A stretch of 21,946 nucleotides of DNA, taken from assembly GCA_024626585.2 (NCBI GenBank), contig JANKJI020000001.1:6361615-6383560 (forward strand), in the 5' to 3' direction. Source of the stretch: Ginkgo biloba (taxonomy: Eukaryota; Plantae; Ginkgophyta). The notes under the pieces were generated by a model. That model did not search any database, was not told the origin of the DNA, and was given only the letters and a program-made list of their open reading frames with translations. Shown here piece after piece: positions 1,500-17,722 of the stretch. A program made the position numbers and the translations under genes. Every line of letters begins with the position of its first letter. The first letter of the stretch is position 1.

Positions 1500-2025
1500 T
1501 AAATCTAGTTTAACCTAGATATCAATCCAAGCATCCATCTTATAGGATAAAGGGAGTAGTGGTTTACCTCCTAGCCTATTTTTCAAGTGTTTAACTAGAT
1601 TAAAATTACGCAAGATAATCAAAGGGGAACTAGGAAGAATCATTTCCATCCAATCCCACAATCCAGTCATATCTTAAGGGGGAATTATAAGCATAGACAC
1701 TAATAATACCAAACCTAATGGAGTTAATTTTTATAAAAATATAAACTATTGTATTATTAGGGTGTTTCCCCATTGGAAAATGGATTCCTTTGTCCAATTT
1801 TTATAGCATATCACTACTCCACCACTACCCTCTTATGATTAGTTAACACAAAATTGAGGAAAGCTTGGATATTTTGGATAGCTTTCCTAAGATGGTATCC
1901 TTTAACCTTCATCTCTTGAAGTGTAAGAAGGTAAGGTATGCCAACTATGGATAGTACCACATGTCTAAGCATATCTCTCCTTTGTCGCAATCATAGGCCA
2001 TCCACATTCTGTGAACAACATGAAA
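1500..2025 (-). pseudogene. LINE (L1-type) ORF2 AP-endonuclease remnant
   Basis: Manual minus-strand translation with frameshifts: SQNVDGL (SWNVRGL)...LLTLQEMK...TNH..GSGGVVI...FGIISVYAYNS...LWDWMEMILPSSPLIILRNFNLV (GDFNMV)...RLGG. The APE motifs appear in the correct order. Confidence 0.85.
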
Positions 2026-2049
2026 AATTAATCAATTAACAACAGATTT

Positions 2050-2640
2050 CATTCTTGAAACATCACCATCCTTAAAGGCCGTGATCTCATTAACCTTCCT
2101 ATCCAAAATATCCATTTCCTCATTCACCTTGTAAATACTCTATTTCTTTTACCAAGTTTCCATCCTCCATAATAAGAAACAAGCTATTGATTACTAAAAT
2201 TAATCTCTTATCCATGGGAGAGGTGTGTGTTATATTCTTAAGGATCTTCTTCTTCCCAACTTCAGTCTTACCTTTACCCTTCTTTGAAGGGGAAAGAGGA
2301 GAGAAAATTTCCCTTCTATGCCATCTCTTCTTTAACATTCATAGTTATCTTTGGGGTAAGTTATCATACATTCCTTACCATTCCCACTATAGGTAAATAT
2401 AAACATAATGGAAATCCATCCCATACTTATGAATTTTGGAAAGAGGTGTTACACCTAACCTTATTAGGAGTGGCTAGAGACCTTTTGAATCCCACCTAGT
2501 AAAATTATTTCAACCAACTCCCAAAAAGAGGATAAAATTATCAAAATCACTACTCAAGAACCTCTTGAAGATTCTTCCATTCCTTCCCTTTCAACCTATT
2601 CCCTATTGATAGTGTTCCCTTAGGGATAAAAATGTCTTCC
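2050..2640 (-). mobile_element. Possible C-terminal remnant of LINE ORF1 upstream of the endonuclease
   Basis: Purine-rich, K/S/P-rich minus-strand reading (SPLSPSKKGKGK, ORF 2120-2338) directly upstream of the EN domain. Supported by position only; no diagnostic motif. Confidence 0.35.
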
Positions 2641-4099
2641 CCTAACTTAATCAATTGTTATTTTAATTGAAGTGTTTCCCTTTTATAAAGGAAATATATT
2701 TTTACATTGCCCATTTTAATGTCAAATTAGAGACTTCAACCTTCTCTAAGTGAAGGTTTATTATTAATCTTTAGTTTCCATGTTTAGAACCAACACATTG
2801 CTTATTAATGAATAATAGTAACTAACTAATTCAACAAATAATACAATGATAAATCTTAATAAATGTTGACCTAGTTTGTAAATTTTATTTTATCCAAGCA
2901 TTATAGCTTTGTTCCTTACATCACTAGCACATATATTATTTCCTATATTCCCTTTTTGAAACAAAAATAAGGGCATGTTGTATCATAGACATTTCTCCAA
3001 ATATTTTAACACATTAGTAAAACTAAATACTATTATGAAATCACTTTACAATCTATAATTCAATTTGTTTGTTTACAATAATTTGAATTTACATACAAAG
3101 GATAATGGTATAGTAAACTCCATAAATTTGACGTAGTTGATAGTTTTCTATAATAATATTATAAGGAAGAGTAGAATCATGTCTTATTAGTAGTTGATTT
3201 AAAGCTCAAATAATACCTATACATACTTAGCACAAAAATAAATTTAAGAAATTTATAATAATATAGTATAAGGATGGGTAGAATCCTTAGTTATCATGAA
3301 TATATTAAAATACATATCAAAGCCAATAACAACAACTTCTAAGAAAACATGAAAGCATAAGGCCTAATATTATAAACAAATAAAGAAAGTAACAAACATA
3401 TGACGCATTAGCTTCTACCAATATTATAAATAAATTAATTTTCAAATAATTTTAGAGTATTTAAAATTTATATAAGTTAAAAAAATTTCAAAGTTTTACT
3501 TAATAGGGAAAAAACTATTGACACTTATATTATCAAATATAAAAAAATTTTACTTGTCATAAATGACAAATGGAAACAAACTTATGAATTTATTTTGAAG
3601 GCTAATTTAATAATTAACATTCTATGACAAGTGAAATGTCCTTTAAAGGGCATTACATGTTGAAAAATTGATCCTTACTTCTTATACTTTTAATTGCATG
3701 GATATAGAAATGCATTGAACAATATCTCTCTATCTTACCTCCATTGTTGTTTTCCAATGAGAACGTAGCCAATAATAATGCAACACAACAACAAGGCTTC
3801 AGTTTCATCTCAATGCTTCTTTGAAAAATACAAAATTACAATTTTAAATATCATTTAAAGGAGGATGCCAAAATTATATAATATGCAATTTCTCAAACTT
3901 TTTAAAATAAAAATCAATCTGTAATAAGTTTATCCCCTTGGTTTCATTATATTCCCACCAAGTTATTGGTCTAGTATTAATGTAATTCCTTTTTACATAC
4001 TTATAGATGCATACTATGAGCACACTATTATTAACATTTTTATTTTCTTAAATATAAATATATTTTATGTGTAGGGAGGCTATAAAGTCTATATTACAT

Positions 4100-4352
4100 T
4101 TTTATTGCCCTTTTTTGCACCCTTGTATTTTCCTTTTCCATTTATGTAAATATATCCTCTATTTCTTATCTATCATTGAGCTTTGTACCCTTACAACTAT
4201 TTATTGGATCTCATGAGTGAATCCATTTATTTTCACTCCACACTCCTTATCTTATGCATCATTGTTATTAAATTCTATGGTTATTTAATATGTTCTCCTC
4301 ATTACACCATGTTATCTTACCAAATAGGATTTTTATATTCTTTTTACCACAT
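4100..4352 (+). repeat. Copy of dispersed LTR-like repeat family (segment A)
   Basis: Aligns by eye with 7315-7565. Shared anchors: tccttatcttatg (4244-4256 vs 7457-7469), ctatggttat, cctcattaYaccatg. Confidence 0.7.
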
Positions 4353-4452
4353 NNNNNNNNNNNNNNNNNNNNNNNNNNNNNNNNNNNNNNNNNNNNNNNN
4401 NNNNNNNNNNNNNNNNNNNNNNNNNNNNNNNNNNNNNNNNNNNNNNNNNNNN

Positions 4453-5478
4453 CTATTCTAAGTGTTCATCCTCATTTTTATAAAATTTCTAAATTGTTAT
4501 GTTTTTTGTGTTTTTTTTCATTTGAGGGATTTACCAATGACGCTATGTAGCAGTTTCCATGCTAAATTTTATCTTTGACCTATGTCTGAGTGTTTCTCAA
4601 TCCATGACCTCTCCTTTGCATATCTTTGGATCTATAGTATATAATAGATAAAATTCATGGTATGGTGGATCATGTTAATTCTCTTGACATCTATATACTA
4701 CATTCTGTGATTCTTTTATTTTGGAATTTTTTATTTTTCAAGTTATGAGCAACAATGTTTTTATATCACATGGCATCAGCCCATGTTTATGGGTTCTCTA
4801 CTCTAAATAGTATTTTATATTTTTGTTCTTTATTTATAGCCTATCACCAATCATGTTGTTCTTCAACATTTATAGCTTCAAATCTTATTTCTTTATTTTT
4901 TCTCAACGTTAAAGTCTTCCATCGTCATTTCTTTCTTCAAATACGACTAGGGTTATATTTATTGACTACCTAAGTTCTTTACACAAAGGATGTAACTTAT
5001 CTATGAATCCAAATAGTATTCTCAAGGATCTAAAATATTTATTCACTAGAGGCACTCTTACTGCAACTATAACTCTGGATTGTAGTAATCTTTCTCCAGA
5101 TTCAACAATCATGTTTAAGCATTTGTTTGAATGGTGTAGTAGTTACTTCTTGAAAATAACCCAACAAAAAAAAATTGTCAATAGATCAAAATAAATAACA
5201 AAATATTTATAGGCAAGTTTTCAAACTTTATTTGATACCATTCAAATATTTAAGATGCACACATAACTTAGAGTTTCAACATGAAAACCTCAACTTTGAT
5301 ATTGATAACATAACATGGAGAGAATATATCTAACACAATAATAACTCTATTATATTTCTCAATATATATTTTAATACAATCAACCTCTATTTATAAATAT
5401 AGAGGTCATAACTACTAACCACTGACCATAACCTCAACCATCTGACTGTTTACAACATATGAAAAATATGACTCTTAA
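4453..5478 (-). mobile_element. Putative decayed LTR retrotransposon 5' end: LTR remnant, PBS-like site and gag-like region
   Basis: Minus-strand TATAAATAGAGG near 5384-5395, TGGTATCAAA (tRNA-iMet-type PBS core) at 5231-5240, and a downstream purine-rich stop-riddled reading with a gag-like VENP*TWADAM. The LTR terminal CA is not preserved. Confidence 0.4.
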
Positions 5479-6279
5479 NNNNNNNNNNNNNNNNNNNNNN
5501 NNNNNNNNNNNNNNNNNNNNNNNNNNNNNNNNNNNNNNNNNNNNNNNNNNNNNNNNNNNNNNNNNNNNNNNNNNNNNNAAGTAGAGTAGGTGGATGTAGG
5601 TAGAAGAATAAGAATAAAGAACTAGGTATTGGGTATGTAGAAAATCCCTTATGTTATTCATTCATTTATGAGGTTAATAAGGCATGTTATAGACAAATAA
5701 TACTATATCTATCAAGGTCATTCTTAAAAATTAATACAATAGTTTACTATAAGACATGTTAGTTAGAGATATGTTTCTATGTTAGGTAGTGTTTATGATA
5801 AAAATCACCCCTATAATATATGGAAATGAGTTGAAGTAATTAATGGTATTAACACTAGAGACACTTTTTGTGTGTGATGGGAGATGAATCCTTATGTAGT
5901 GAGATATCTCTTTGATTTCTCTCATTCCCTTGGGGAACTCAAATCAAAGTCCTAGATAGATGAAAAACCTTTAGTGTGACAACACAAAGAGAACTAAGAG
6001 TAATGTATGAGGGAATATAATCACAAAAATAAGATTCCATACATTGATAAGATAAAGGACATGCACATATATTGAGATAATACAAAGAGAGAGAGATTCA
6101 ATAACATATAAAAGATATATTAATATGAAAAATAGTAAGGTGGTACAAACTAGAATATACATGGCAATAAAGGATTAGTACCCTATATGAATACAATCCT
6201 TCTCCCCTCTATCTTTCTAATAACCTACTCCCACGCATGATGGATATGATAGTGCCTCAATAATGTGACAAAAATTCAA

Positions 6280-6545
6280 TAGAGTTTTGCATTATGATTT
6301 ATAGCATGAATGGATTAATTCTTATCAACACTATATAATTATAATTGATAGATAATACACATGATAAAATAAAATGAAATAATATAATAAAATATTTCCC
6401 ATGATTTTTGGGATTGGATTCAAGAGGTATGTATATGATAAATGAGGCCTCATGACCTAAATAATGGAATGTAAGCATATAATATCATCTTATGAAAAGA
6501 CATGAGCATATGTGTACACATGGATGATTGATGCAATACTATATC
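6280..6545 (-). repeat. Inverted copy of dispersed LTR-like repeat (segment B)
   Basis: Reverse complement aligns with 7600-7850. Anchor ggcctcatgac (6446-6456) is the reverse complement of gtcatgaggcc (7684-7694); atttcattttattt and catgctata are also shared. Confidence 0.75.
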
Positions 6546-6566
6546 TATGAAATGAATGAAGATGAG

Positions 6567-6749
6567 TTTTATCACCCTTTTATGCACCTCTAAAATTTCC
6601 TTCCAAGTCACATTCATTGATATTTCTACCATTTCAACCATTTGTTGCAACTTGTGATTGTACCAATTCATTTCCACTTTATGGTCCTTAGCTTATTTAC
6701 TCATGTCAATTATTCCTATGGTTACCTTGATCATGGTCCTTATATCACC
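6567..6749 (+). repeat. Direct copy of dispersed LTR-like repeat (segment A)
   Basis: 20-bp identity tttctaccatttcaaccatt (6623-6642 vs 7395-7414), plus ttcatttcca and ttcctatggtta anchors. Confidence 0.8.
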
Positions 6750-7314
6750 NNNNNNNNNNNNNNNNNNNNNNNNNNNNNNNNNNNNNNNNNNNNNNNNNNN
6801 NNNNNNNNNNNNNNNNNNNNNNNNNNNNNNNNNNNNNNNNNNNNNNNNNTTATAAAAAGGCATCACATGAAAACAGTCACTACATTGATTTTGAATTTTT
6901 AATATTAATTGCATTATTTTGGAAAACTAGTTTTTTTAGATAATGAATTATATGTAATTTTATTTTTATGCATATTAAATTATTAGGGATCTCATTATCT
7001 AAGGGAGAGAGGGGGGTAAGATACGAGGTTAATTATTTAGGGTGCATTTAGGCCAAGAAATACCTTTTGAGGAATTATGGGCTCGTTAAGTTCTATTGAG
7101 CCCCTAGATTGAACACCCATATATTGAGTACCATTATTTATATTTGGAGTTACATGTGGGAGTGTGTTTATTATTGGGACTAATTCTTGTAAGTTACTTA
7201 AAAGAATATTCATTTTATCATTAGCCTATTACAAAGTGATTAGTTTATGTCATTTTAATGGGACTTACATAAGGGTTTGTATAAACATGTTATTTCTTAG
7301 AGGGTATGTGGTAG

Positions 7315-7895
7315 TGTTATCACCATTTTTTACACCTCCAAATTTTCATTTCCAATTGTACAAATCATATTGTTGTTTCTTATATTTATTGATTTTTCTA
7401 CCATTTCAACCATTCCTTGAAATTCATGAGTGCAACAGTTCATTTCCATTTCATGATCCTTATCTTATGAACTCATGACATTTTTTCCTATGGTTATCTC
7501 AATTATATTCCTCATTATACCATGGCCATTTTTCCACACATTATTTTTTTATACCTTTAACCATTTAACCATAATTGCATTGCCTCACATATTACACATA
7601 GTCTTATGTCAACAATCCATGTTCACTCATAAGCATGACCTCGTGTAATTCAACATCATATGATTACCTCCTATAATTTCAATGTCATGAGGCCCCATAT
7701 ATCATTATAAATATATTTTGAGACTAGAATAAAAATGTATAGGGAATATTTCATTTTATTTCGAGGAAGTGTATCATTCACCAACTATAATCATGGATTA
7801 TTAATAAGACTTATTACTTACATGCTATATAGTATAAGATGAGACTCTACTATATTTATATTATAATAAGGACTCATCCCCCATCACACACAATA
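7315..7895 (+). repeat. Longest copy (A+B) of dispersed LTR-like repeat family
   Basis: Non-coding; homologous to 4100-4352(+), 6567-6749(+), 6280-6545(-) and about 5865-5895(-). LTR identity is an inference. Confidence 0.7.
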
Positions 7896-8291
7896 ATTTT
7901 TATCTATGTTTATACCAATAATTACTTCATCCTTCGGGTTATTTTTGTCATAAATATAACTAGTGATCATACTATATCATTCCTAGTTTATTTTTTATAT
8001 TATATCCGTTATTCCATAGTTTTTCCATTTGTTATAGAAATATTTTCAATTCATCTTTCACTTTGTGGTTCCAAATATACTATTTACATTTTTTTTTTTA
8101 GGTTTAGTCAATTATTGGTTGTAATTATTTTCTAAATTTTCTATTTCAAAGGCGATGTAGTTTTGTCCTTGTCATGTCTTGATTTTTCCTCNNNNNNNNN
8201 NNNNNNNNNNNNNNNNNNNNNNNNNNNNNNNNNNNNNNNNNNNNNNNNNNNNNNNNNNNNNNNNNNNNNNNNNNNNNNNNNNNNNNNNNNN

Positions 8292-9318
8292 TCCATGATG
8301 CATCAAATGATAAATCAATATTTCATGTGTATAATAGGGATATTCTTCCATGTGAGATTTTTGCTAAGGTGGGAATATTCCCCCATGCACTTGATGTATT
8401 TAAAGAGGGAAATCTCATGAATATTAGTGAGACTCGCCCCATCACCATTTCCATAACTAACACTCTTGAAGAAATTTTTATTGGAGCCGAATATACTCCC
8501 CATGAGGAAATTCAATTTAAATCTCTCTGTCAAGAATACCATGACATCTTTGCTTGGTCTTATAATGAATTGCTAGGGATGGATCCCAATTTTATCTCTC
8601 ACCATATAGATACCTATTCCAAATTTATAATTCACCAAAAATAATGTCCCATAAAACCTAAATTAGATGAAGTTATTAAGAAATAAGTTAAAAAACTTCT
8701 TGATGATATGTTCCTTTTCCCTATCACATATATTAAATGGATAGCTAACATTGTGCCCATGATAAAGAAAAATAGATCCATCAAAATCGATGTTAATCTT
8801 ATATATCTCAATAGCGCCTCTCCTAAATATAACCATCCAACACCATTCATCAATGATATTATAGATTCCATGGTTGGGAACGAATTTATTTCCTTAATGG
8901 ATGGATTTTCAAGCTACAATCAAATTCTTATATTTGATCAAGATCATATCAAGACTGTATCTACTACTCCTTGGGGTACTTTCACCTATCATGTTATGCC
9001 TTTTTTATTAATAAACTTTGGTGCCCCTTATCAAAATGCTATGATAAGGTATTTTAATGATATGTTGAACATGCATGCCAATGCTTACCTTGATAATTTG
9101 AATGTTAAATATTTTAAATGTCAATATTATTTTGATGGTTTACATATTATATTTGAACATTATCATATGCACTAAATTAGGCTTAATCCATATAAGTGAA
9201 TTTTGGGTGTACATTCTTTATGCCTTTTAGGCTATATTATTTATGACCAGGGAATACATATAAATTCCACCAAAATTATGTCTATTGTGGATATGGATCA
9301 CCTAAAAATTTGAAGCAA
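8292..9318 (+). pseudogene. Ty3/gypsy (Tat-like) reverse transcriptase remnant
   Basis: One frame with stops: EGNLMNISETRPI...DIFAWSYNELLGMDP...WIANIVPMIKKN...MDGFSSYNQI...TPWGTFTYHVMPF...YLDN (YxDD with D>N, 9086-9097)...IRLNPYK*...LLGYII. Confidence 0.95.
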
Positions 9319-9418: not shown

Positions 9419-10022
9419 GAGATAACAGATGCATAGTAAATCCCTACTCTAATTAAGTTGCATAGACATCACAAGTATATTATGTTCACATACATAACAC
9501 TATACACAATCATCTAGAAAACCATCCAAATCTTTATATTAATGATTAAGTAGAAATACATATAGCTATTATATTATAGTATAACATAACCATCACCCCC
9601 TCATAATTAACCTATGAGATCTATATATACAAAGTGCAAATGGTTACATAATTATCGTAGTATTTACAAAATTCATAGACTTGTGTCGGATGTCTTTCTC
9701 TAATTCAGCGAGATGTTGTCATTCTATTGCATCTGGATTTGTTCCAAAATTTGTCGGTGGTATAAATCATGTCAATGTGCTTGGATGCTTCTCCCATGTT
9801 GGTGTTGGGTCACTCTTTTCTAACCCTCATCAATGGTTTCTCCTTTGTCGATATCGAGTCCTTTTTTCCCTGATGCTCATCGGTAGGTATCCCTTTGTTA
9901 GCGTTGGTTCTTCTCTTTTTGACACTCATCATTGTCCCTCCTATGTTGGCATCGATCAAGATAATATTTCACATGCGTTGATCAAGATAATATCCAACAT
10001 GCATCGACCTCTTCATCCAACA
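9419..10022 (-). mobile_element. Younger LTR (5' terminus TG at 10022) inserted into a protease remnant
   Basis: Minus strand starts TGTTGGATGAAGAGG, carries U3-like tandem subrepeats and a TATA-like tatatatag at about 9621-9629, and retains more CpG than its flanks. The other end is lost in a gap. Confidence 0.6.
9794..10007. repeat. About 49-bp degenerate tandem repeat (3 full units plus a partial) followed by a 26-bp tandem duplication
   Basis: Unit starts near 9794, 9842, 9892 and 9940, with ctcatc at 9826, 9876 and 9925. gatcaagataatat occurs at 9954 and 9980. Confidence 0.8.
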
Positions 10023-13559: not shown

Positions 13560-13895
13560 ATCCCATCACGTACCCATTCTAAGGTGCAAGAAAAAATAAA
13601 ACGAATACCAACCATGATGATGTAATCTTGTGACGAGTCATCATCATTACATGACTACGAGTCATTACGAGTCATCATCATTAATCTTGTGTAGTCATAA
13701 AGAATACCAACTTCAATGATACAATATTATGACCAATCATATGTAACCCACCACTTTTTCACTCTAAGACACAAGGAAAAATAAAATAATCTAATTGCAA
13801 TGATGCAATATTGTGACCAGTTGTATTCAACCTATCATTTACACACTTTAATGCGTAAGAAAAATAGAAAGGATATTATCTTTGATGGTGTCACT
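13560..13895 (+). repeat. About 84-bp degenerate tandem repeat in the retrotransposon 3' UTR
   Basis: Y-aagRaaaata motif at about 13587, 13772 and 13856, each in a unit with tgatgYaatattRtgacca-like sequence. Confidence 0.65.
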
Positions 13896-13944
13896 TTACA
13901 CCTGTTCATGATTAGAAGAAGAATTTAAATAAATGATTCTTTCA

Positions 13945-14000
13945 TAATCATCAGAATTTCAACCCAGGAAATACCATAAGGGTTGGAAGTCTAATGATTA
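13945..14000. other. 21-bp inverted repeat / hairpin with 14-nt loop
   Basis: taatcatcagaatttcaaccc (13945-13965) vs gggttggaagtctaatgatta (13980-14000): 18 of 21 positions complementary. Confidence 0.85.
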
Positions 14001-14332
14001 AGAGTAAAAGTATAGGCGAGCAACAATTATNNNNNNNNNNNNNNNNNNNNNNNNNNNNNNNNNNNNNNNNNNNNNNNNNNNNNNNNNNNNNNNNNNNNNN
14101 NNNNNNNNNNNNNNNNNNNNNNNNTAAAGATTATAAAATTCTTTATCTTCTCATCATCCGAACACATTTCACTCTTTATGAGCTCATCAGCGGATAAAAC
14201 TTGCTTGAGTGATTAAGAGTAAAAGTATAGGTGAGTAGAAATTATATCGATAACCACACAATAATGAATATTCTAAAGTAACAAGAATAAAAAATAAACA
14301 ACAACGAATAAGAATGAATAAAAAACTTTTGA
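13995..14332 (-). repeat. Tandem repeat (period about 215 nt) carrying a hammerhead ribozyme; Penelope pLTR or retrozyme-like
   Basis: 36-bp block tgattaagagtaaaagtataggYgagYaNNaattat at 13995-14030 and 14210-14245 (32 of 36 identical), separated by a 94-N gap. The minus strand is T-rich. Confidence 0.6.
14154..14197 (-). ncRNA. Type I hammerhead ribozyme with minimal stem III, CpG-decayed
   Basis: Minus-strand RNA reads UUAUCCG-CUGAUGA-GCUC-AUAAA-GAGU-GAAA-UGUG-UU/CGGAUGA. It has an intact CUGAUGA and GAAA core, a 7-bp stem I, a 4-bp stem II and a GUH triplet. Predicted cut between 14161 and 14160. Confidence 0.85.
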
Positions 14333-14468
14333 NNNNNNNNNNNNNNNNNNNNNNNNNNNNNNNNNNNNNNNNNNNNNNNNNNNNNNNNNNNNNNNNNNNN
14401 NNNNNNNNNNNNNNNNNNNNNNNNNNNNNNNNCTCTCTTTCTAACTGCACTGCTGCACATTCACTTCC

Positions 14469-14489
14469 ATATATATATATATATATATA
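14469..14489. repeat. (AT)10 microsatellite
   Basis: Read directly. Confidence 0.95.
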
Positions 14490-15087
14490 CATACGGGAGA
14501 AAGCCAGAGTTAACCCTATCGATATATCAGACTTGCCACAATAATACCACTTTATGTCTAACGGAATCGTGAGCATTTCCCCCCAAGGGAAGAGGGTAAA
14601 GAAGATCATCGCCAAACCACGCGCATTTCCCTCCGCCAGACGTGTAGTTGGACAAAATATTTGAAGCGCGCCGTGGGTTGATTATACCCTTTTTTTTTGG
14701 GTAAGTGATGGTAACATTCCACCAAGTTATTATTTTCGCCAGCTTTGAGTATGCGGCTCGTAGACTGACGGTGCGCTTTCGTTCTAGATGTTATGGTAAT
14801 TATCTGACTATCTAAACACGTTTTTGTCGTCTTCTTAGGAAAACTCAAGTTGGTAGTCACCACCAACATGATCGTAATCTCGTATCCTTGGAAAATTGGT
14901 AGGGTAGGTCCCCCATTGTCTTTCCCTTTTGAAGAACATACGCACACGTGGTGCCAATCACATTTGCACACAAGGGAGCAACATGTCAAATGGAGTCTTG
15001 TAAGCATGTGCTTGTCTCATTATTAGTCTAGTACAAAGGATGATAAGGATTCCCAACTCAGAGTCCTCCATTGAACGTGTTGCCGAC

Positions 15088-15136
15088 AACCAATAGTTTT
15101 GATTCGTTGAACATAACCAATAGTTTTGATTCGTTG
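15088..15136. repeat. Perfect 22-bp direct repeat, period 27
   Basis: aaccaatagttttgattcgttg at 15088-15109 and 15115-15136. Confidence 0.95.
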
Positions 15137-16175: not shown

Positions 16176-17722
16176 GACCTTAAGTAGGCCCCTATTTCTA
16201 CTTTTATCCTTATGCCAATAAAATTTACCAAAGATTTCATCTTATACATTTCATTTTTTGATATGGCTATAAGCAAGGTCCTTGGCTCTTGCATTGAATA
16301 TGTCATATATTATGCAAGCAAATTCTTAGTTGGTTACAAATTGTACTATCCTGATATCGATAGATAGTGCCTCGCAATTGCTAATGCAACTACAAGTCCA
16401 AGGCATTATGTGCTCCATAACCATACTTAGGTTATGCTTCCATCTAATTCTCTAAAATATCTCTTATACTAGACAATCTTATCAAGATGATTTGGCCTCT
16501 AGACAATTCTCCTTTAATAGTTTGAGTTTGAATTTGTACATCCCAAAGCTAAGAAGGGCATGAGCTTAGCTGAAATCCTTATTGACTCCCTCCTCCACCT
16601 TAAGCTCATATCCCAATGGTCGACACTTTTCTTAGATGATACCTTACTTCTAATTTTAGACGAAGACGAATAGTTTGGAGATATCACTCGGCAATTTAGA
16701 GATTTGACCTATGCTCTATATCTTGAAAAAGCCCAACAACACTTCACATCTTAACTCTTGGCTATATCATCCTAGATGACACCTTGCACAAGAGGTCCAT
16801 AGATGGAGTTATATGTCATTGTGTTGCACAAGATAACGCAAAAATCATCCTTAATAAGTGTCATTTTGGTTTGTGTGGAGGTCATTTCTCCATATTTAGT
16901 ATAACATCTAAGATCATTAGAGGTAGTTATTATTAGCCTATACTTGTCAAAGATTGTCATGAAGTTATCAAGTATNNNNNNNNNNNNNNNNNNNNNNNNN
17001 NNNNNNNNCAAATAACATGCACCCCCGACTCCACTTCATCCTATAATTATTATAGATCCATTTGAAAAATGGGACATTGATTTTTTTTGGACCATTTGAA
17101 CCACTTGTGGGGACTCTATATTAGTAAATAATTATTATAGTTGACTATTTTACTATGTTGGTTGAGGTTATGTTAGTAAAGAGGGCTAATGGTGAAATAA
17201 CCACGATGTTCATATTCAACCCAATCATCACAATATTTAATACACCACTAGATATTGTTTTAGACCATGGAGCTCACTTTATTAATGAGTTGATGGAGGA
17301 ATTATTACATAAACCTGGGATCGATCACTCTAAGACTTCATATAATTACCCTCAAACCAACAAACTAGTTGAATCATTTAATAAGATGTTAGAGATGATT
17401 CTTCAATGTATAATTGATGAAAATCATCAAGACTAGGATATTAAAATATAGTCGACATTATGGTTCTATAGAACAACTACCAAAGTTACTACTAGTGTCA
17501 TACCTTTCCCACTCGTATCTTGGAGAGAAGTTATTCTTCCAACTAAAGTGCAAAAACAAAAGTAAGTACAAAAGTATGAAAGACAAATTGAAAATAAGAT
17601 GGCTTGGACCATATGTTTTGGAAAAGCTCTAAGAAAATGGATCAACATAATTGTCCAAGTCAATAGGAGAGTTAGTGCCAAGACGTGTTAATGATGATTG
17701 TCTAAAGCTTTTCAAAGAATGA
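16176..17722 (+). pseudogene. Ty3/gypsy (Tat-like) RNase H and integrase remnant
   Basis: FILYIS..DMAISKVL...VIYYASK.LVGY...CLAI...RHYVL...LKYLL...KAKKGMSLAEIL (RH), then CHFGLCGGHFS...YY*PILVKDCHE (zinc finger), PFEKWDIDF, IVLDHGAHF, YPQTNKLVESFNK (DDE residues retained), RWLGPYVL, VNDDCLKLF. Confidence 0.93.

What the first reader, a model, noticed from the sequence alone, without database searches (positions are those of the whole stretch)
14140..14218. Type I hammerhead ribozyme hidden between two assembly gaps
Seen: the minus strand has the complete catalytic core (CUGAUGA, GAAA, GUU), stem I UUAUCCG/CGGAUGA and stem II GCUC/GAGU. Stem I can extend past an 8-nt bulge (CUCA/UGAG, then UCUUAAUC/GAUAAAGA). 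Known: type I hammerheads with a minimal palindromic stem III are typical of Penelope-like elements and animal non-LTR retrozymes, whereas described plant LTR retrozymes use type III motifs. Inference: this may be an undescribed Penelope-type or retrozyme self-cleaving RNA family in a non-flowering plant.
Basis: partly seen in the sequence, partly recalled or inferred. Interest (0 to 1): 0.9.

Follow-up and report, generated by a model that had tools for sequence, protein, structure and literature searches.

The report
Hammerhead ribozyme repeat family in Ginkgo
This is one worn copy of a roughly 213-base tandem repeat whose better-kept copies in the same plant genome (probably Ginkgo) carry a textbook animal-type self-cutting hammerhead RNA, an arrangement so far described in animals rather than seed plants.

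Summary
On the minus strand, 14197-14154 holds a complete type I hammerhead. It is the only descriptor hit in the window, and 40 Mb of composition-matched random sequence gave none. Rfam does not call it (best match HH9, 13.8 bits, threshold 52).

Contigs from independent public runs of the same organism show that 13998-14332 belongs to a multi-copy family. Units join head to tail every 203-216 nt, most often 213.

Most copies differ from the window at 14164, 14166 and 14171. These majority letters restore the G10.1-C11.1 pair and a palindromic helix III (A-CGCG-U), the classic newt/axolotl-type hammerhead that cleaves as a dimer. The window copy has lost these features through three CpG-to-TpG changes and is probably inactive. 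This confirms two companion first-reader notes on this window (tandem array; CpG decay).

The family looks and probably works like animal non-LTR retrozymes or Penelope-like element (PLE) repeats. Cleavage, circular RNA and a Penelope link were not shown, and raw RNA reads were very few.

Type I hammerheads are already known in Selaginella Penelope-like elements. This is therefore a new member of a known kind in a new host group, not a new class.

The scan also holds an unchecked hammerhead note elsewhere in this genome (s1-603273). The species identity (Ginkgo) comes from earlier notes, not from my tests.

The parts
14154..14197 (-). Type I hammerhead domain. Helix I is 14197-14191 / 14160-14154. 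The core is CUGAUGA 14190-14184 and GAAA 14170-14167. Helix II is 14183-14180 / 14174-14171 with loop 14179-14175. The helix III remnant is 14167-14162, and H17 is U14161.
   Evidence: Sequence; descriptor scan; partial HH9 alignment; fold.
14160..14161 (-). Predicted self-cleavage site, 3' of U14161 (H17) and 5' of C14160 (position 1.1).
   Evidence: Follows from hammerhead numbering applied to the sequence, and the HH9 covariance-model alignment uses the same register. Cleavage was not tested.
14164..14171 (-). Three positions (14164, 14166, 14171) where the window has + strand A (minus U) but most family copies have G (minus C). The majority letters restore C11.1 and the CGCG centre of helix III.
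   Evidence: read-laying table 3. Shares of the majority letter in DNA-run contigs (X2) are 78%, 59% and 66%. In run X17 they are 94%, 96% and 73%. All three are CpG-to-TpG changes on the ribozyme strand.
14198..14218 (-). 5' strand of the distal extension of helix I: an 8-nt bulge at 14205-14198 (candidate loop 1), CUCA at 14209-14206 and UCUUAAUC at 14218-14211.
   Evidence: The minimum-energy fold of 14218-14140 forms these pairs. Conservation among copies was not measurable. The family's end point at 14213 falls inside this helix.
14140..14153 (-). 3' strand of the distal extension of helix I: UGAG at 14153-14150 and GAUAAAGA at 14147-14140.
   Evidence: Loose-end consensus from other copies reads ...TTCTTGATC on the + strand here, a related variant (table 7).
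14125..14332 (-). One repeat unit as far as it is assembled: 208 nt visible of about 213, 27% G+C, no ORF.
   Evidence: Head-to-tail joints run from 14305-14332 back to 14125-14128 with 2-35 extra letters. They appear in X2 and X17 contigs and give units of 203-216 nt (tables 5 and 5c).
13998..14030 (-). Piece of the neighbouring unit, 89% identical to 14210-14245. The array ends here against low-copy flank.
   Evidence: the repeat finder family D4, spacing 215. Depth steps up at about 13998, and an X2 contig covers 13600-14025 without any difference (tables 2, 7, 8).
14031..14124 (.). Assembly gap (94 N) hiding the rest of the neighbouring unit.
   Evidence: Contig ends that run into the gap read like the sequence after 14245 (table 7, place 14030).
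14333..14432 (.). Assembly gap (100 N) hiding the other end of the array.
   Evidence: Low-copy depth resumes from about 14501.

Best explanation
The stretch is a decayed unit of a tandemly repeated, non-coding, AT-rich element of about 213 nt. It sits in a very large plant genome, most likely Ginkgo.

The intact form of the element encodes on the minus strand a canonical type I hammerhead ribozyme. It has a 7-bp helix I, a 4-bp helix II closed by G10.1-C11.1, and a helix III reduced to the A15.1-U16.1 pair around a palindromic CGCG.

Inferred mechanism, by analogy with newt/axolotl satellite and animal non-LTR retrozyme hammerheads:
1. Multimeric transcripts of the array fold so that two neighbouring ribozymes pair through their palindromic ACGCGU segments (a double hammerhead).
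2. Each cuts after U17 (14161/14160). [quoted passage not shown]
3. A host tRNA ligase can circularise these RNAs.
4. A reverse transcriptase can copy the circles back into new head-to-tail arrays. The Penelope-like elements noted elsewhere in this genome are the obvious candidate source of that enzyme.

The window copy has lost C11.1 and both C's of the palindrome through three CpG-to-TpG changes. It is probably catalytically dead.

Shown here: the motif, the family, the tandem unit, the majority letters and the CpG-type decay. Inferred only: cleavage, the dimer mode, circularisation, and who mobilises the element.
For: - The motif is complete and unique in the window. A relaxed descriptor found 0 matches in 40 Mb of random sequence.
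- The stretch 13998-14332 is covered by 186 contigs in DNA run X2. Their summed depth is 1,600-8,900, against about 78 on the right flank.
- Head-to-tail joints give units of 203-216 nt (tables 5 and 5c). The in-window repeat spacing is 215.
- The majority letters at 14164, 14166 and 14171 turn GAGU...UGUG into GAGC...CGCG (table 3).
- In X17 the three shares (94%, 96%, 73%) mean that at least 63% of the depth carries all three majority letters.
- The ACGCGU self-duplex is -7.5 kcal/mol. The window's AUGUGU gives 0.
- Eight of the ten variable sites listed are CpG transitions, as expected for a methylated, neutrally decaying repeat.
- Core, helix II and loop 2 align closely to the HH9 consensus.
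- This architecture (helix I about 6 bp, helix II 4 bp, helix III 1-2 bp with a palindromic loop, tandem 150-450 bp units, low G+C) is the published description of canonical metazoan type I hammerheads and non-LTR retrozymes (PMC4209133, PMC7229834).
- Earlier notes of this scan report Penelope-like reverse transcriptase relics in the same genome. I did not check them.
Against: - No cleavage, RNA-end or circle evidence. Read laying found no place where molecules begin or end.
- Only 5 and 1 raw RNA reads were laid, from about 2% and 6% samples of two RNA runs.
- Run X17 is only guessed to be RNA, and its head-to-tail joints could equally come from tandem DNA.
- Rfam thresholds are not met.
- No compensatory changes could be scored, because individual copies were not retrievable.
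- The three majority letters need not co-occur in the DNA copies (lower bound 3% in X2).
- The unit as a whole does not fold better than shuffles (z = -1.66), unlike the highly self-paired retrozyme circles described in animals.
- Arrays end at a fixed unit position (13998 = 14213) that is not the ribozyme cut site. The simple circle-copying model does not predict this.
- No Penelope-like ORF lies in this window.
Confidence: 0.6

Rival explanations
1. The repeat is not an independent non-autonomous element. It is the ribozyme-bearing terminal repeat (pseudo-LTR) of autonomous Penelope-like elements, seen here as a solo or tandem fragment. The hammerhead would then process the long tandem PLE transcript.
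For: Canonical type I hammerheads lie in the pseudo-LTRs of endonuclease-deficient PLEs of the plant Selaginella (PMC4209133). In Xenopus, retrozyme families are sister to PLE pseudo-LTRs (bioRxiv 10.64898/2026.07.22.740005). Earlier notes report several PLE reverse transcriptase relics in this genome. The array has a fixed end position, as expected of an element terminus.
Against: Many distinct contigs join unit to unit at about 213 nt, which points to short arrays without an ORF between copies. No PLE-like ORF or Pfam hit lies within several kb on either side here. A 4.7-kb contig that leaves the repeat at 14213 runs into unrelated sequence (record 15), but I could not read it.
Confidence: 0.2
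2. It is an ordinary satellite or dispersed repeat that carries a hammerhead-like string by chance, amplified with the repeat, with no catalytic history.
For: My own back-of-envelope estimate is that a genome of about 10 Gb holds a few chance matches to a loose descriptor. The window copy is weak (G-U at 10.1/11.1, no helix III). Rfam score is 13.8 bits. The ribozyme part is not better conserved than the rest of the unit.
Against: The family majority is more canonical than the copy, in exactly the three places that matter. The palindromic helix III and the G10.1-C11.1 pair are the marks used in the literature to tell real motifs from chance ones (PMC4209133). Helix II and loop 2 match HH9 closely. 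A relaxed descriptor found 0 hits in 40 Mb of random sequence.
Confidence: 0.07
3. It is an endogenised copy of a viroid-like or satellite circular RNA (a retroviroid-like element such as the carnation small viroid-like RNA) rather than a retrotransposon-type repeat.
For: The element is small, non-coding and ribozyme-bearing, forms head-to-tail multimers, and has a plant host.
Against: Plant viroid-like RNAs carry type III hammerheads (PMC7761336 and PMC11722881) and usually have ribozymes in both polarities (my own knowledge). Here there is one type I motif and none on the + strand. G+C is 27% and the fold is not unusually stable. Tens of diverged, CpG-decayed copies indicate long genomic residence.
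Confidence: 0.05
4. It is a domesticated hammerhead kept for a host function, like the intronic HH9/HH10 motifs of amniotes.
For: The best Rfam similarity is to HH9. Another unchecked note reports a hammerhead in a presumed RTEL1 intron of this genome.
Against: This copy is multi-copy, decayed at key positions, intergenic among retroelement debris and flanked by no exon.
Confidence: 0.03

Closest known systems
Metazoan non-LTR retrozymes / satellite hammerheads (newt satellite 2, axolotl HHR_Amex1, coral, mussel; Cervera and de la Pena 2020, PMC7229834)
   Same: Both have one type I hammerhead per unit and head-to-tail units of a few hundred bp (here about 213; published range 150-450). Both have low G+C (27% here), no ORF, and no LTR, primer-binding site (PBS) or polypurine tract (PPT). 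Helix III is a single A-U pair around a palindromic tetranucleotide, as in HHR_Amex1 and newt, which cleave well only as dimers.
   Different: The host is a seed plant, not an animal. The copy number seen here is tens to about a hundred units, against up to 10^5 in axolotl. Expression looks very low in two raw RNA runs. Circular RNA and cleavage are not shown. The unit is not predicted to be unusually self-paired.
Canonical type I hammerheads in pseudo-LTRs of endonuclease-deficient Penelope-like elements of Selaginella (Cervera and de la Pena 2014, PMC4209133)
   Same: Both have a plant host and a canonical (not minimal) type I architecture resembling the Schistosoma and human motifs. A likely PLE association is suggested by PLE relics noted in the same genome.
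   Different: Here the motif lies in short ORF-less tandem units. No PLE is adjacent, and I could not compare the unit with any PLE terminus.
Minimal hammerheads of animal Penelope-like elements and Terminons
   Same: Both are type I, occur in tandem context, are presumed to act as dimers, and have a palindromic centre of helix III.
   Different: The minimal PLE motif lacks helix III nucleotides, has a longer helix II (about 6 bp) and an extra base between positions 9 and 10.1 (PMC4209133). This family has a 4-bp helix II and no extra base.
Plant LTR retrozymes (Cervera et al. 2016, PMC4918200)
   Same: Both are non-coding, hammerhead-bearing repeats in a plant genome, with a proposed circular RNA intermediate.
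   Different: Plant LTR retrozymes use type III hammerheads inside LTRs. They have a primer-binding site and polypurine tract, 600-1000 nt between ribozymes, and G+C above 55%. Complete elements are known only in dicots. None of this applies here.
Rfam Hammerhead_HH9 (RF02275)
   Same: Core, helix II and the A-rich loop 2 align almost letter for letter.
   Different: The score of 13.8 bits is far below the gathering score of 52. The distal helix I and the longer helix III of HH9 are absent. HH9 is a single-copy intronic motif of amniotes.

Membership tests
Hammerhead ribozyme, type I | Conserved core: C3 U4 G5 A6 N7 G8 A9, G12 A13 A14, A15.1-U16.1, H17 | tested here: met
   All letters are present at 14190-14184, 14170-14167, 14162 and 14161 on the minus strand.
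Hammerhead ribozyme, type I | Helices I and II flank the core, with helix I open-ended (type I topology) | tested here: met
   Helix I has 7 bp and helix II 4 bp with a 5-nt loop. The minimum-energy fold reproduces both.
Hammerhead ribozyme, type I | G10.1-C11.1 closing pair of helix II | tested here: inconclusive
   The window copy has G-U (14183/14171). The family majority (66% of DNA-contig depth, 73% in X17) has G-C.
Hammerhead ribozyme, type I | Helix III, or a palindromic substitute that allows a double hammerhead | tested here: inconclusive
   The window copy AUGUGU forms no self-duplex (0 kcal/mol). The majority form ACGCGU gives -7.5 kcal/mol.
Hammerhead ribozyme, type I | Reaches the Rfam gathering score of a hammerhead model | tested here: not met
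   No hit at gathering thresholds. HH9 scores 13.8 bits against 52.
Hammerhead ribozyme, type I | Site-specific self-cleavage | not testable with these tools
   Needs in vitro transcription or end-specific RNA sequencing. Read laying showed no pile-up of ends, but only 6 raw reads were laid.
Hammerhead ribozyme, type I | Loop 1 / loop 2 tertiary contacts | not tested
   An 8-nt bulge in helix I (14205-14198) and the loop AUAAA could play these roles. I had no set of copies with which to test conservation.
Non-LTR retrozyme (as defined in animals) | Short head-to-tail units (150-450 bp), each with a type I hammerhead | tested here: met
   Units are 203-216 nt, from joints in many contigs. Spacing in the window is 215.
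Non-LTR retrozyme (as defined in animals) | Low G+C, no ORF, no LTR, primer-binding site or polypurine tract | tested here: met
   G+C is 27%. The ORFs that overlap the unit all run through the N gaps, and none gave a Pfam hit. The unit is too short for LTRs. I made no formal search for a primer-binding site.
Non-LTR retrozyme (as defined in animals) | Abundant unit-length linear and circular RNAs | tested here: inconclusive
   X17 (labelled RNA by a guess) covers the repeat at summed depth up to 1,496 and the flanks at 0. The two raw RNA runs gave 5 and 1 reads. Contigs cannot tell circles from tandem DNA.
Non-LTR retrozyme (as defined in animals) | Co-occurrence with Penelope-like elements in the genome | not tested
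   Known only from earlier unchecked notes of this scan. There is no PLE in this window.
Non-LTR retrozyme (as defined in animals) | Metazoan host | tested here: not met
   Earlier follow-ups name the host Ginkgo. My own support is weak: DNA-run contig sets of up to 8.4 billion letters, and a Streptophyta label on the nearest reverse transcriptase cluster.
Plant LTR retrozyme | Type III hammerheads in two LTRs, primer-binding site, polypurine tract, about 700 nt between ribozymes, G+C above 55% | tested here: not met
   The motif is type I, the unit is about 213 nt and G+C is 27%.
Minimal PLE hammerhead | No helix III letters, an extra base between positions 9 and 10.1, helix II of about 6 bp | tested here: not met
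   Helix II has 4 bp, there is no extra base, and four letters lie between 15.1 and 16.1 (definition from PMC4209133).

The most novel reading that the evidence does not exclude
Ginkgo, and perhaps other gymnosperms, harbours a true plant counterpart of the animal non-LTR retrozymes. This would be a roughly 213-nt element with a type I hammerhead that is still transcribed, self-cleaves as a dimer, circularises, and is copied back into tandem arrays by the plant's endonuclease-free Penelope-like elements. It would link the animal (type I, non-LTR) and plant (type III, LTR) retrozyme worlds. It would also place the hammerhead-Penelope partnership before the plant-animal split, or reveal an old transfer between the kingdoms.
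Probability: 0.3. Interest if true: 0.7.

Novelty: new member of a known kind. Interest (0 to 1): 0.5.

Why it matters
Reviews state that type I hammerheads in tandem repeats belong to animals, and type III hammerheads in LTR retrozymes to flowering plants. A canonical, dimer-type type I hammerhead repeat family in a gymnosperm blurs that split.

It offers a test of whether retrozyme-like circular RNAs and their presumed Penelope-like helpers are an ancient shared eukaryotic system. It also gives a ready marker for repeat annotation, since it explains two assembly gaps here.

The particular copy in this window is a dead relic and has no likely function of its own.

Tried and rejected
- **Rfam at gathering thresholds on the whole window:** nothing. 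At E up to 10 on 1 kb, only a partial HH9 hit appeared.
- **Species check from window ORFs:** The look-up of encoding contigs had no record for two ORFs. The reverse transcriptase ORF found only two distant metagenomic relatives. Pfam gave nothing credible for seven ORFs. The Atlas gave only a generic RVT_1 cluster. The Ginkgo label therefore rests on earlier notes.
- **Metagenome scan for the same helix II plus helix III:** one unrelated contig, L001. It is not a relative of this repeat.
- **Fold of the whole 208-nt unit:** not significantly more stable than shuffles (z = -1.66). No support for a rod-like circle.
- **Strand of the RNA from raw reads:** too few reads (5 and 1), all under 95% alike, and the library protocol is unknown. 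No conclusion.
- **Telomere-complement reading:** I considered that the C/T/A-rich stretch at the RNA-sense 3' end of the unit (14245-14213) is a decayed reverse-complement telomere repeat, as in endonuclease-free PLEs. By eye the match to CCCTAAA is poor, and the family majority is no closer. I dropped this.
- **Alternative cleavage register (after C14160):** rejected because it breaks the 1.1-2.1 pair.
- **Consensus:** I built no full-length consensus of the unit. Only the three majority letters reported by read laying were placed into the 51-nt ribozyme stretch, for folding.

Full report
**What is in the sequence**

On the minus strand, 14197-14154 reads as follows:
- helix I 5' strand UUAUCCG
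- core CUGAUGA
- helix II GCUC, loop AUAAA, GAGU
- GAAA, then UGUG, then UU
- helix I 3' strand CGGAUGA

In standard hammerhead numbering, the cut falls after U17, between 14161 and 14160. The HH9 covariance model aligns the stretch in the same register.

It consists of an 8-nt bulge, then CUCA/UGAG, then UCUUAAUC/GAUAAAGA. The unconstrained minimum-energy fold of 14218-14140 is that structure (-15.3 kcal/mol).

The stretch lies between two N runs, 14031-14124 (94 N) and 14333-14432 (100 N).

**Is it more than chance?**

I wrote a relaxed type I descriptor: CUGANGA, helix II of at least 3 bp, GAAA, 0-12 letters, UH, and helix I of at least 5 bp. It finds this site and no other on either strand of the window. 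It found none in 40 Mb of first-order Markov sequence with the window's composition.

Rfam does not call the motif. There is no hit at gathering thresholds. With permissive filters the only hit is a partial one to Hammerhead_HH9 at 13.8 bits, E 4.6.

The copy has two real weaknesses: a G-U at the normally invariant G10.1-C11.1 pair, and no helix III to speak of.

**The family**

The repeat finder showed that 13995-14030 repeats 14210-14245 at 89% identity and a spacing of 215.

The 208-nt island is held by 20 listed public runs from 10 studies. All but one carry the same organism label.

I laid the contigs of one DNA run (X2) and of one run guessed to be RNA (X17) on 13600-14800.
- 186 contigs (X2) and 75 contigs (X17) match 13998-14332.
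- Summed depth in X2 is 1,600-8,900. The right flank sits at about 78 and the left flank at 85-350.
- Each distinct contig at a joint has a depth of about 70-86, which suggests tens to about a hundred distinct units.
- Contigs join 14305-14332 back to 14125-14128 with 2-35 extra, mostly A-rich letters. The resulting units are 203, 203, 213, 213, 213, 213, 214 and 216 nt.

So this is a head-to-tail repeat of about 213 nt, and the two gaps are where the assembler failed on it. This confirms the companion first-reader note s1-637033.

**The majority form is a canonical hammerhead**

At three + strand positions the window has A, but most copies have G.

| Position | Share with G in X2 | Share with G in X17 |
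|---|---|---|
| 14164 | 78% | 94% |
| 14166 | 59% | 96% |
| 14171 | 66% | 73% |

On the ribozyme strand these letters change GAGU to GAGC, restoring G10.1-C11.1. They also change UGUG to CGCG, so positions 15.1-16.1 read ACGCGU, a perfect palindrome.

In X17 the three shares imply that at least 63% of the depth carries all three letters. In X2 the lower bound is only 3%, so co-occurrence in DNA copies is likely but not proven.

All three window letters are CpG-to-TpG changes on the ribozyme strand, as note s1-637046 predicted.

The other common variants are mostly the same kind of change: 14160 G>A, 14163 C>T, 14165 C>T, 14170 C>T and 14249 G>A. One of them, 14170 (10% of depth), destroys the essential G12. 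Eight of the ten variable sites listed are CpG transitions. This is the signature of a methylated repeat decaying neutrally, not of selection on each copy.

The self-duplex of ACGCGU is -7.5 kcal/mol. The window's AUGUGU forms none. The window copy is therefore probably inactive, both as a monomer and as a dimer.

**What it resembles**

Cervera and de la Pena (PMC4209133) describe the canonical metazoan type I hammerhead. It has a helix I of 6 bp, a helix II of 4 bp, and a helix III of 1-2 bp capped by a small palindromic loop. That helix III is too weak for monomer cleavage, but the ribozyme is active as a double hammerhead when copies lie in tandem.

[quoted passage not shown] This is the architecture of the majority form here.

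The same paper defines non-LTR retrozymes:
- tandem units of 150-450 bp
- low G+C
- no LTR, primer-binding site or polypurine tract

The unit here is about 213 nt with 27% G+C. The only ORFs that overlap it run through the N gaps, and none gave a Pfam hit.

The similarity of core, helix II and loop 2 to the HH9 consensus is close.

The motif is not the "minimal" Penelope hammerhead. It has a 4-bp helix II and no extra base between positions 9 and 10.1.

**Host and novelty**

I could not establish the species myself. Several earlier follow-ups of this scan identify the genome as Ginkgo from annotated genes. In agreement with that, DNA-run contig sets reach 8.4 billion letters, and the window is full of decayed gypsy-type fragments.

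Reviews assign type I hammerheads mostly to animals and type III to plants (PMC7229834, PMC7761336). Complete plant retrozymes are reported only from dicots (PMC11722881). Full-text searches found no paper linking hammerheads or retrozymes with Ginkgo or gymnosperms.

Type I hammerheads are nevertheless not new to plants:
- Canonical ones sit in the pseudo-LTRs of endonuclease-deficient Penelope-like elements of Selaginella (PMC4209133).
- Some Chlamys elements of spike mosses and Chara carry them (PMC8557442).
- Conifers carry Dryad Penelope-like elements (PMC8557442).

Earlier notes also report several Penelope-like reverse transcriptase relics in this same genome, one of them followed up as a dead endonuclease-free element. 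In animals, non-LTR retrozymes co-occur with PLEs and are related to PLE pseudo-LTRs. The most economical reading is a plant member of that same partnership. I rate it a new member of a known kind.

**Expression**

X17 covers the repeat at a summed depth of up to 1,496 and the flanks at 0. In the DNA run the repeat-to-flank ratio is only about 25-115. X17 is therefore unlikely to be plain genomic DNA, and if it is RNA the family is transcribed. Its copies are also closer to the intact motif than the DNA copies are.

The RNA label of X17 is only a guess, and contigs cannot show RNA ends or circles. In raw reads, a 2% sample of a 118-Gb RNA run gave 5 reads and a 6% sample of a poly(A) run gave 1. 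All were under 95% alike to this copy. Expression in those samples is therefore low, and the strand and ends remain unknown.

**Unexplained**

At least two loci end the array at the same unit position. One is this window at 13998, which corresponds to 14213. The other is a 4.7-kb contig that leaves the repeat at 14213 (tables 7 and 8).

This fixed end lies 52 nt upstream of the cut site on the ribozyme strand and inside the proposed distal helix I. A simple model of copying a ribozyme-cut circle does not predict it. It hints at a defined start point for reverse transcription, or at an element terminus as in PLEs.

The other end of this array is hidden in the 100-N gap, which is followed within 40 nt by an (AT)12 microsatellite.

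**Limits**

Only one read-laying run was allowed, and individual copies could not be fetched. As a result I could do no alignment, no covariation test and no comparison with Penelope termini.

Noticed in passing
window 14469-14493: An (AT)12.5 microsatellite lies about 36 nt beyond the 100-N gap that hides the right end of the ribozyme array. Penelope-like elements are reported to insert preferentially into microsatellites, (TA)n for some clades (PMC8557442). The junction itself is not assembled.
   Followed up: no
window 13998 and 14213: The repeat family ends at one fixed unit position in at least two loci. One is this window's left junction, and the other is a 4.7-kb contig of run X2. The position is not the hammerhead cut site and lies inside the proposed distal helix I.
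   Followed up: partly
window 8327-9175 (+) and 17155-17436 (+): Decayed reverse transcriptase and integrase-like ORF fragments of a gypsy-type retroelement lie 8 kb apart and are interrupted by gaps. The ribozyme array sits between them. Pfam finds no credible match, and the Atlas places the reverse transcriptase piece in RVT_1 clusters.
   Followed up: partly
L001 819-883 (+), 934-988 (-), 4-702 (-): This 1.1-kb metagenome contig was found with the helix II plus helix III pattern. It carries a hammerhead-like core with a poor helix I (HH9, 19.9 bits). On the opposite strand it has a twister-P1-like motif (45.9 bits, below the gathering score of 67.2). It also holds a 232-aa ORF with no Pfam match. 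It may be a ribozyme-bearing circular RNA or virus-like agent, and it is unrelated to the plant repeat.
   Followed up: partly
window, 16 N runs (for example 1400-1499, 4353-4452, 14031-14124): Eleven of the 16 gaps are exactly 100 N (placeholders). The 94-N gap beside the ribozyme looks like an estimated size, and it gives the 215-nt spacing expected from the repeat unit.
   Followed up: partly
window 4171-4302, 6612-6743, 7384-7515; 5832-5895 / 7866-7929: These are a three-copy 132-nt direct repeat family (64-79% identical) and a 64-nt inverted repeat pair (80% complementary) 2 kb apart. They are probably pieces of other transposable elements.
   Followed up: no
window 15079-15132 and 9949-10000: These are two short tandem duplications: 27 nt in 2 copies (96% matches by Tandem Repeats Finder, 85% ungapped identity by the repeat finder) and 26 nt in 2 copies (81% identical). 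Their meaning is unknown.
   Followed up: no
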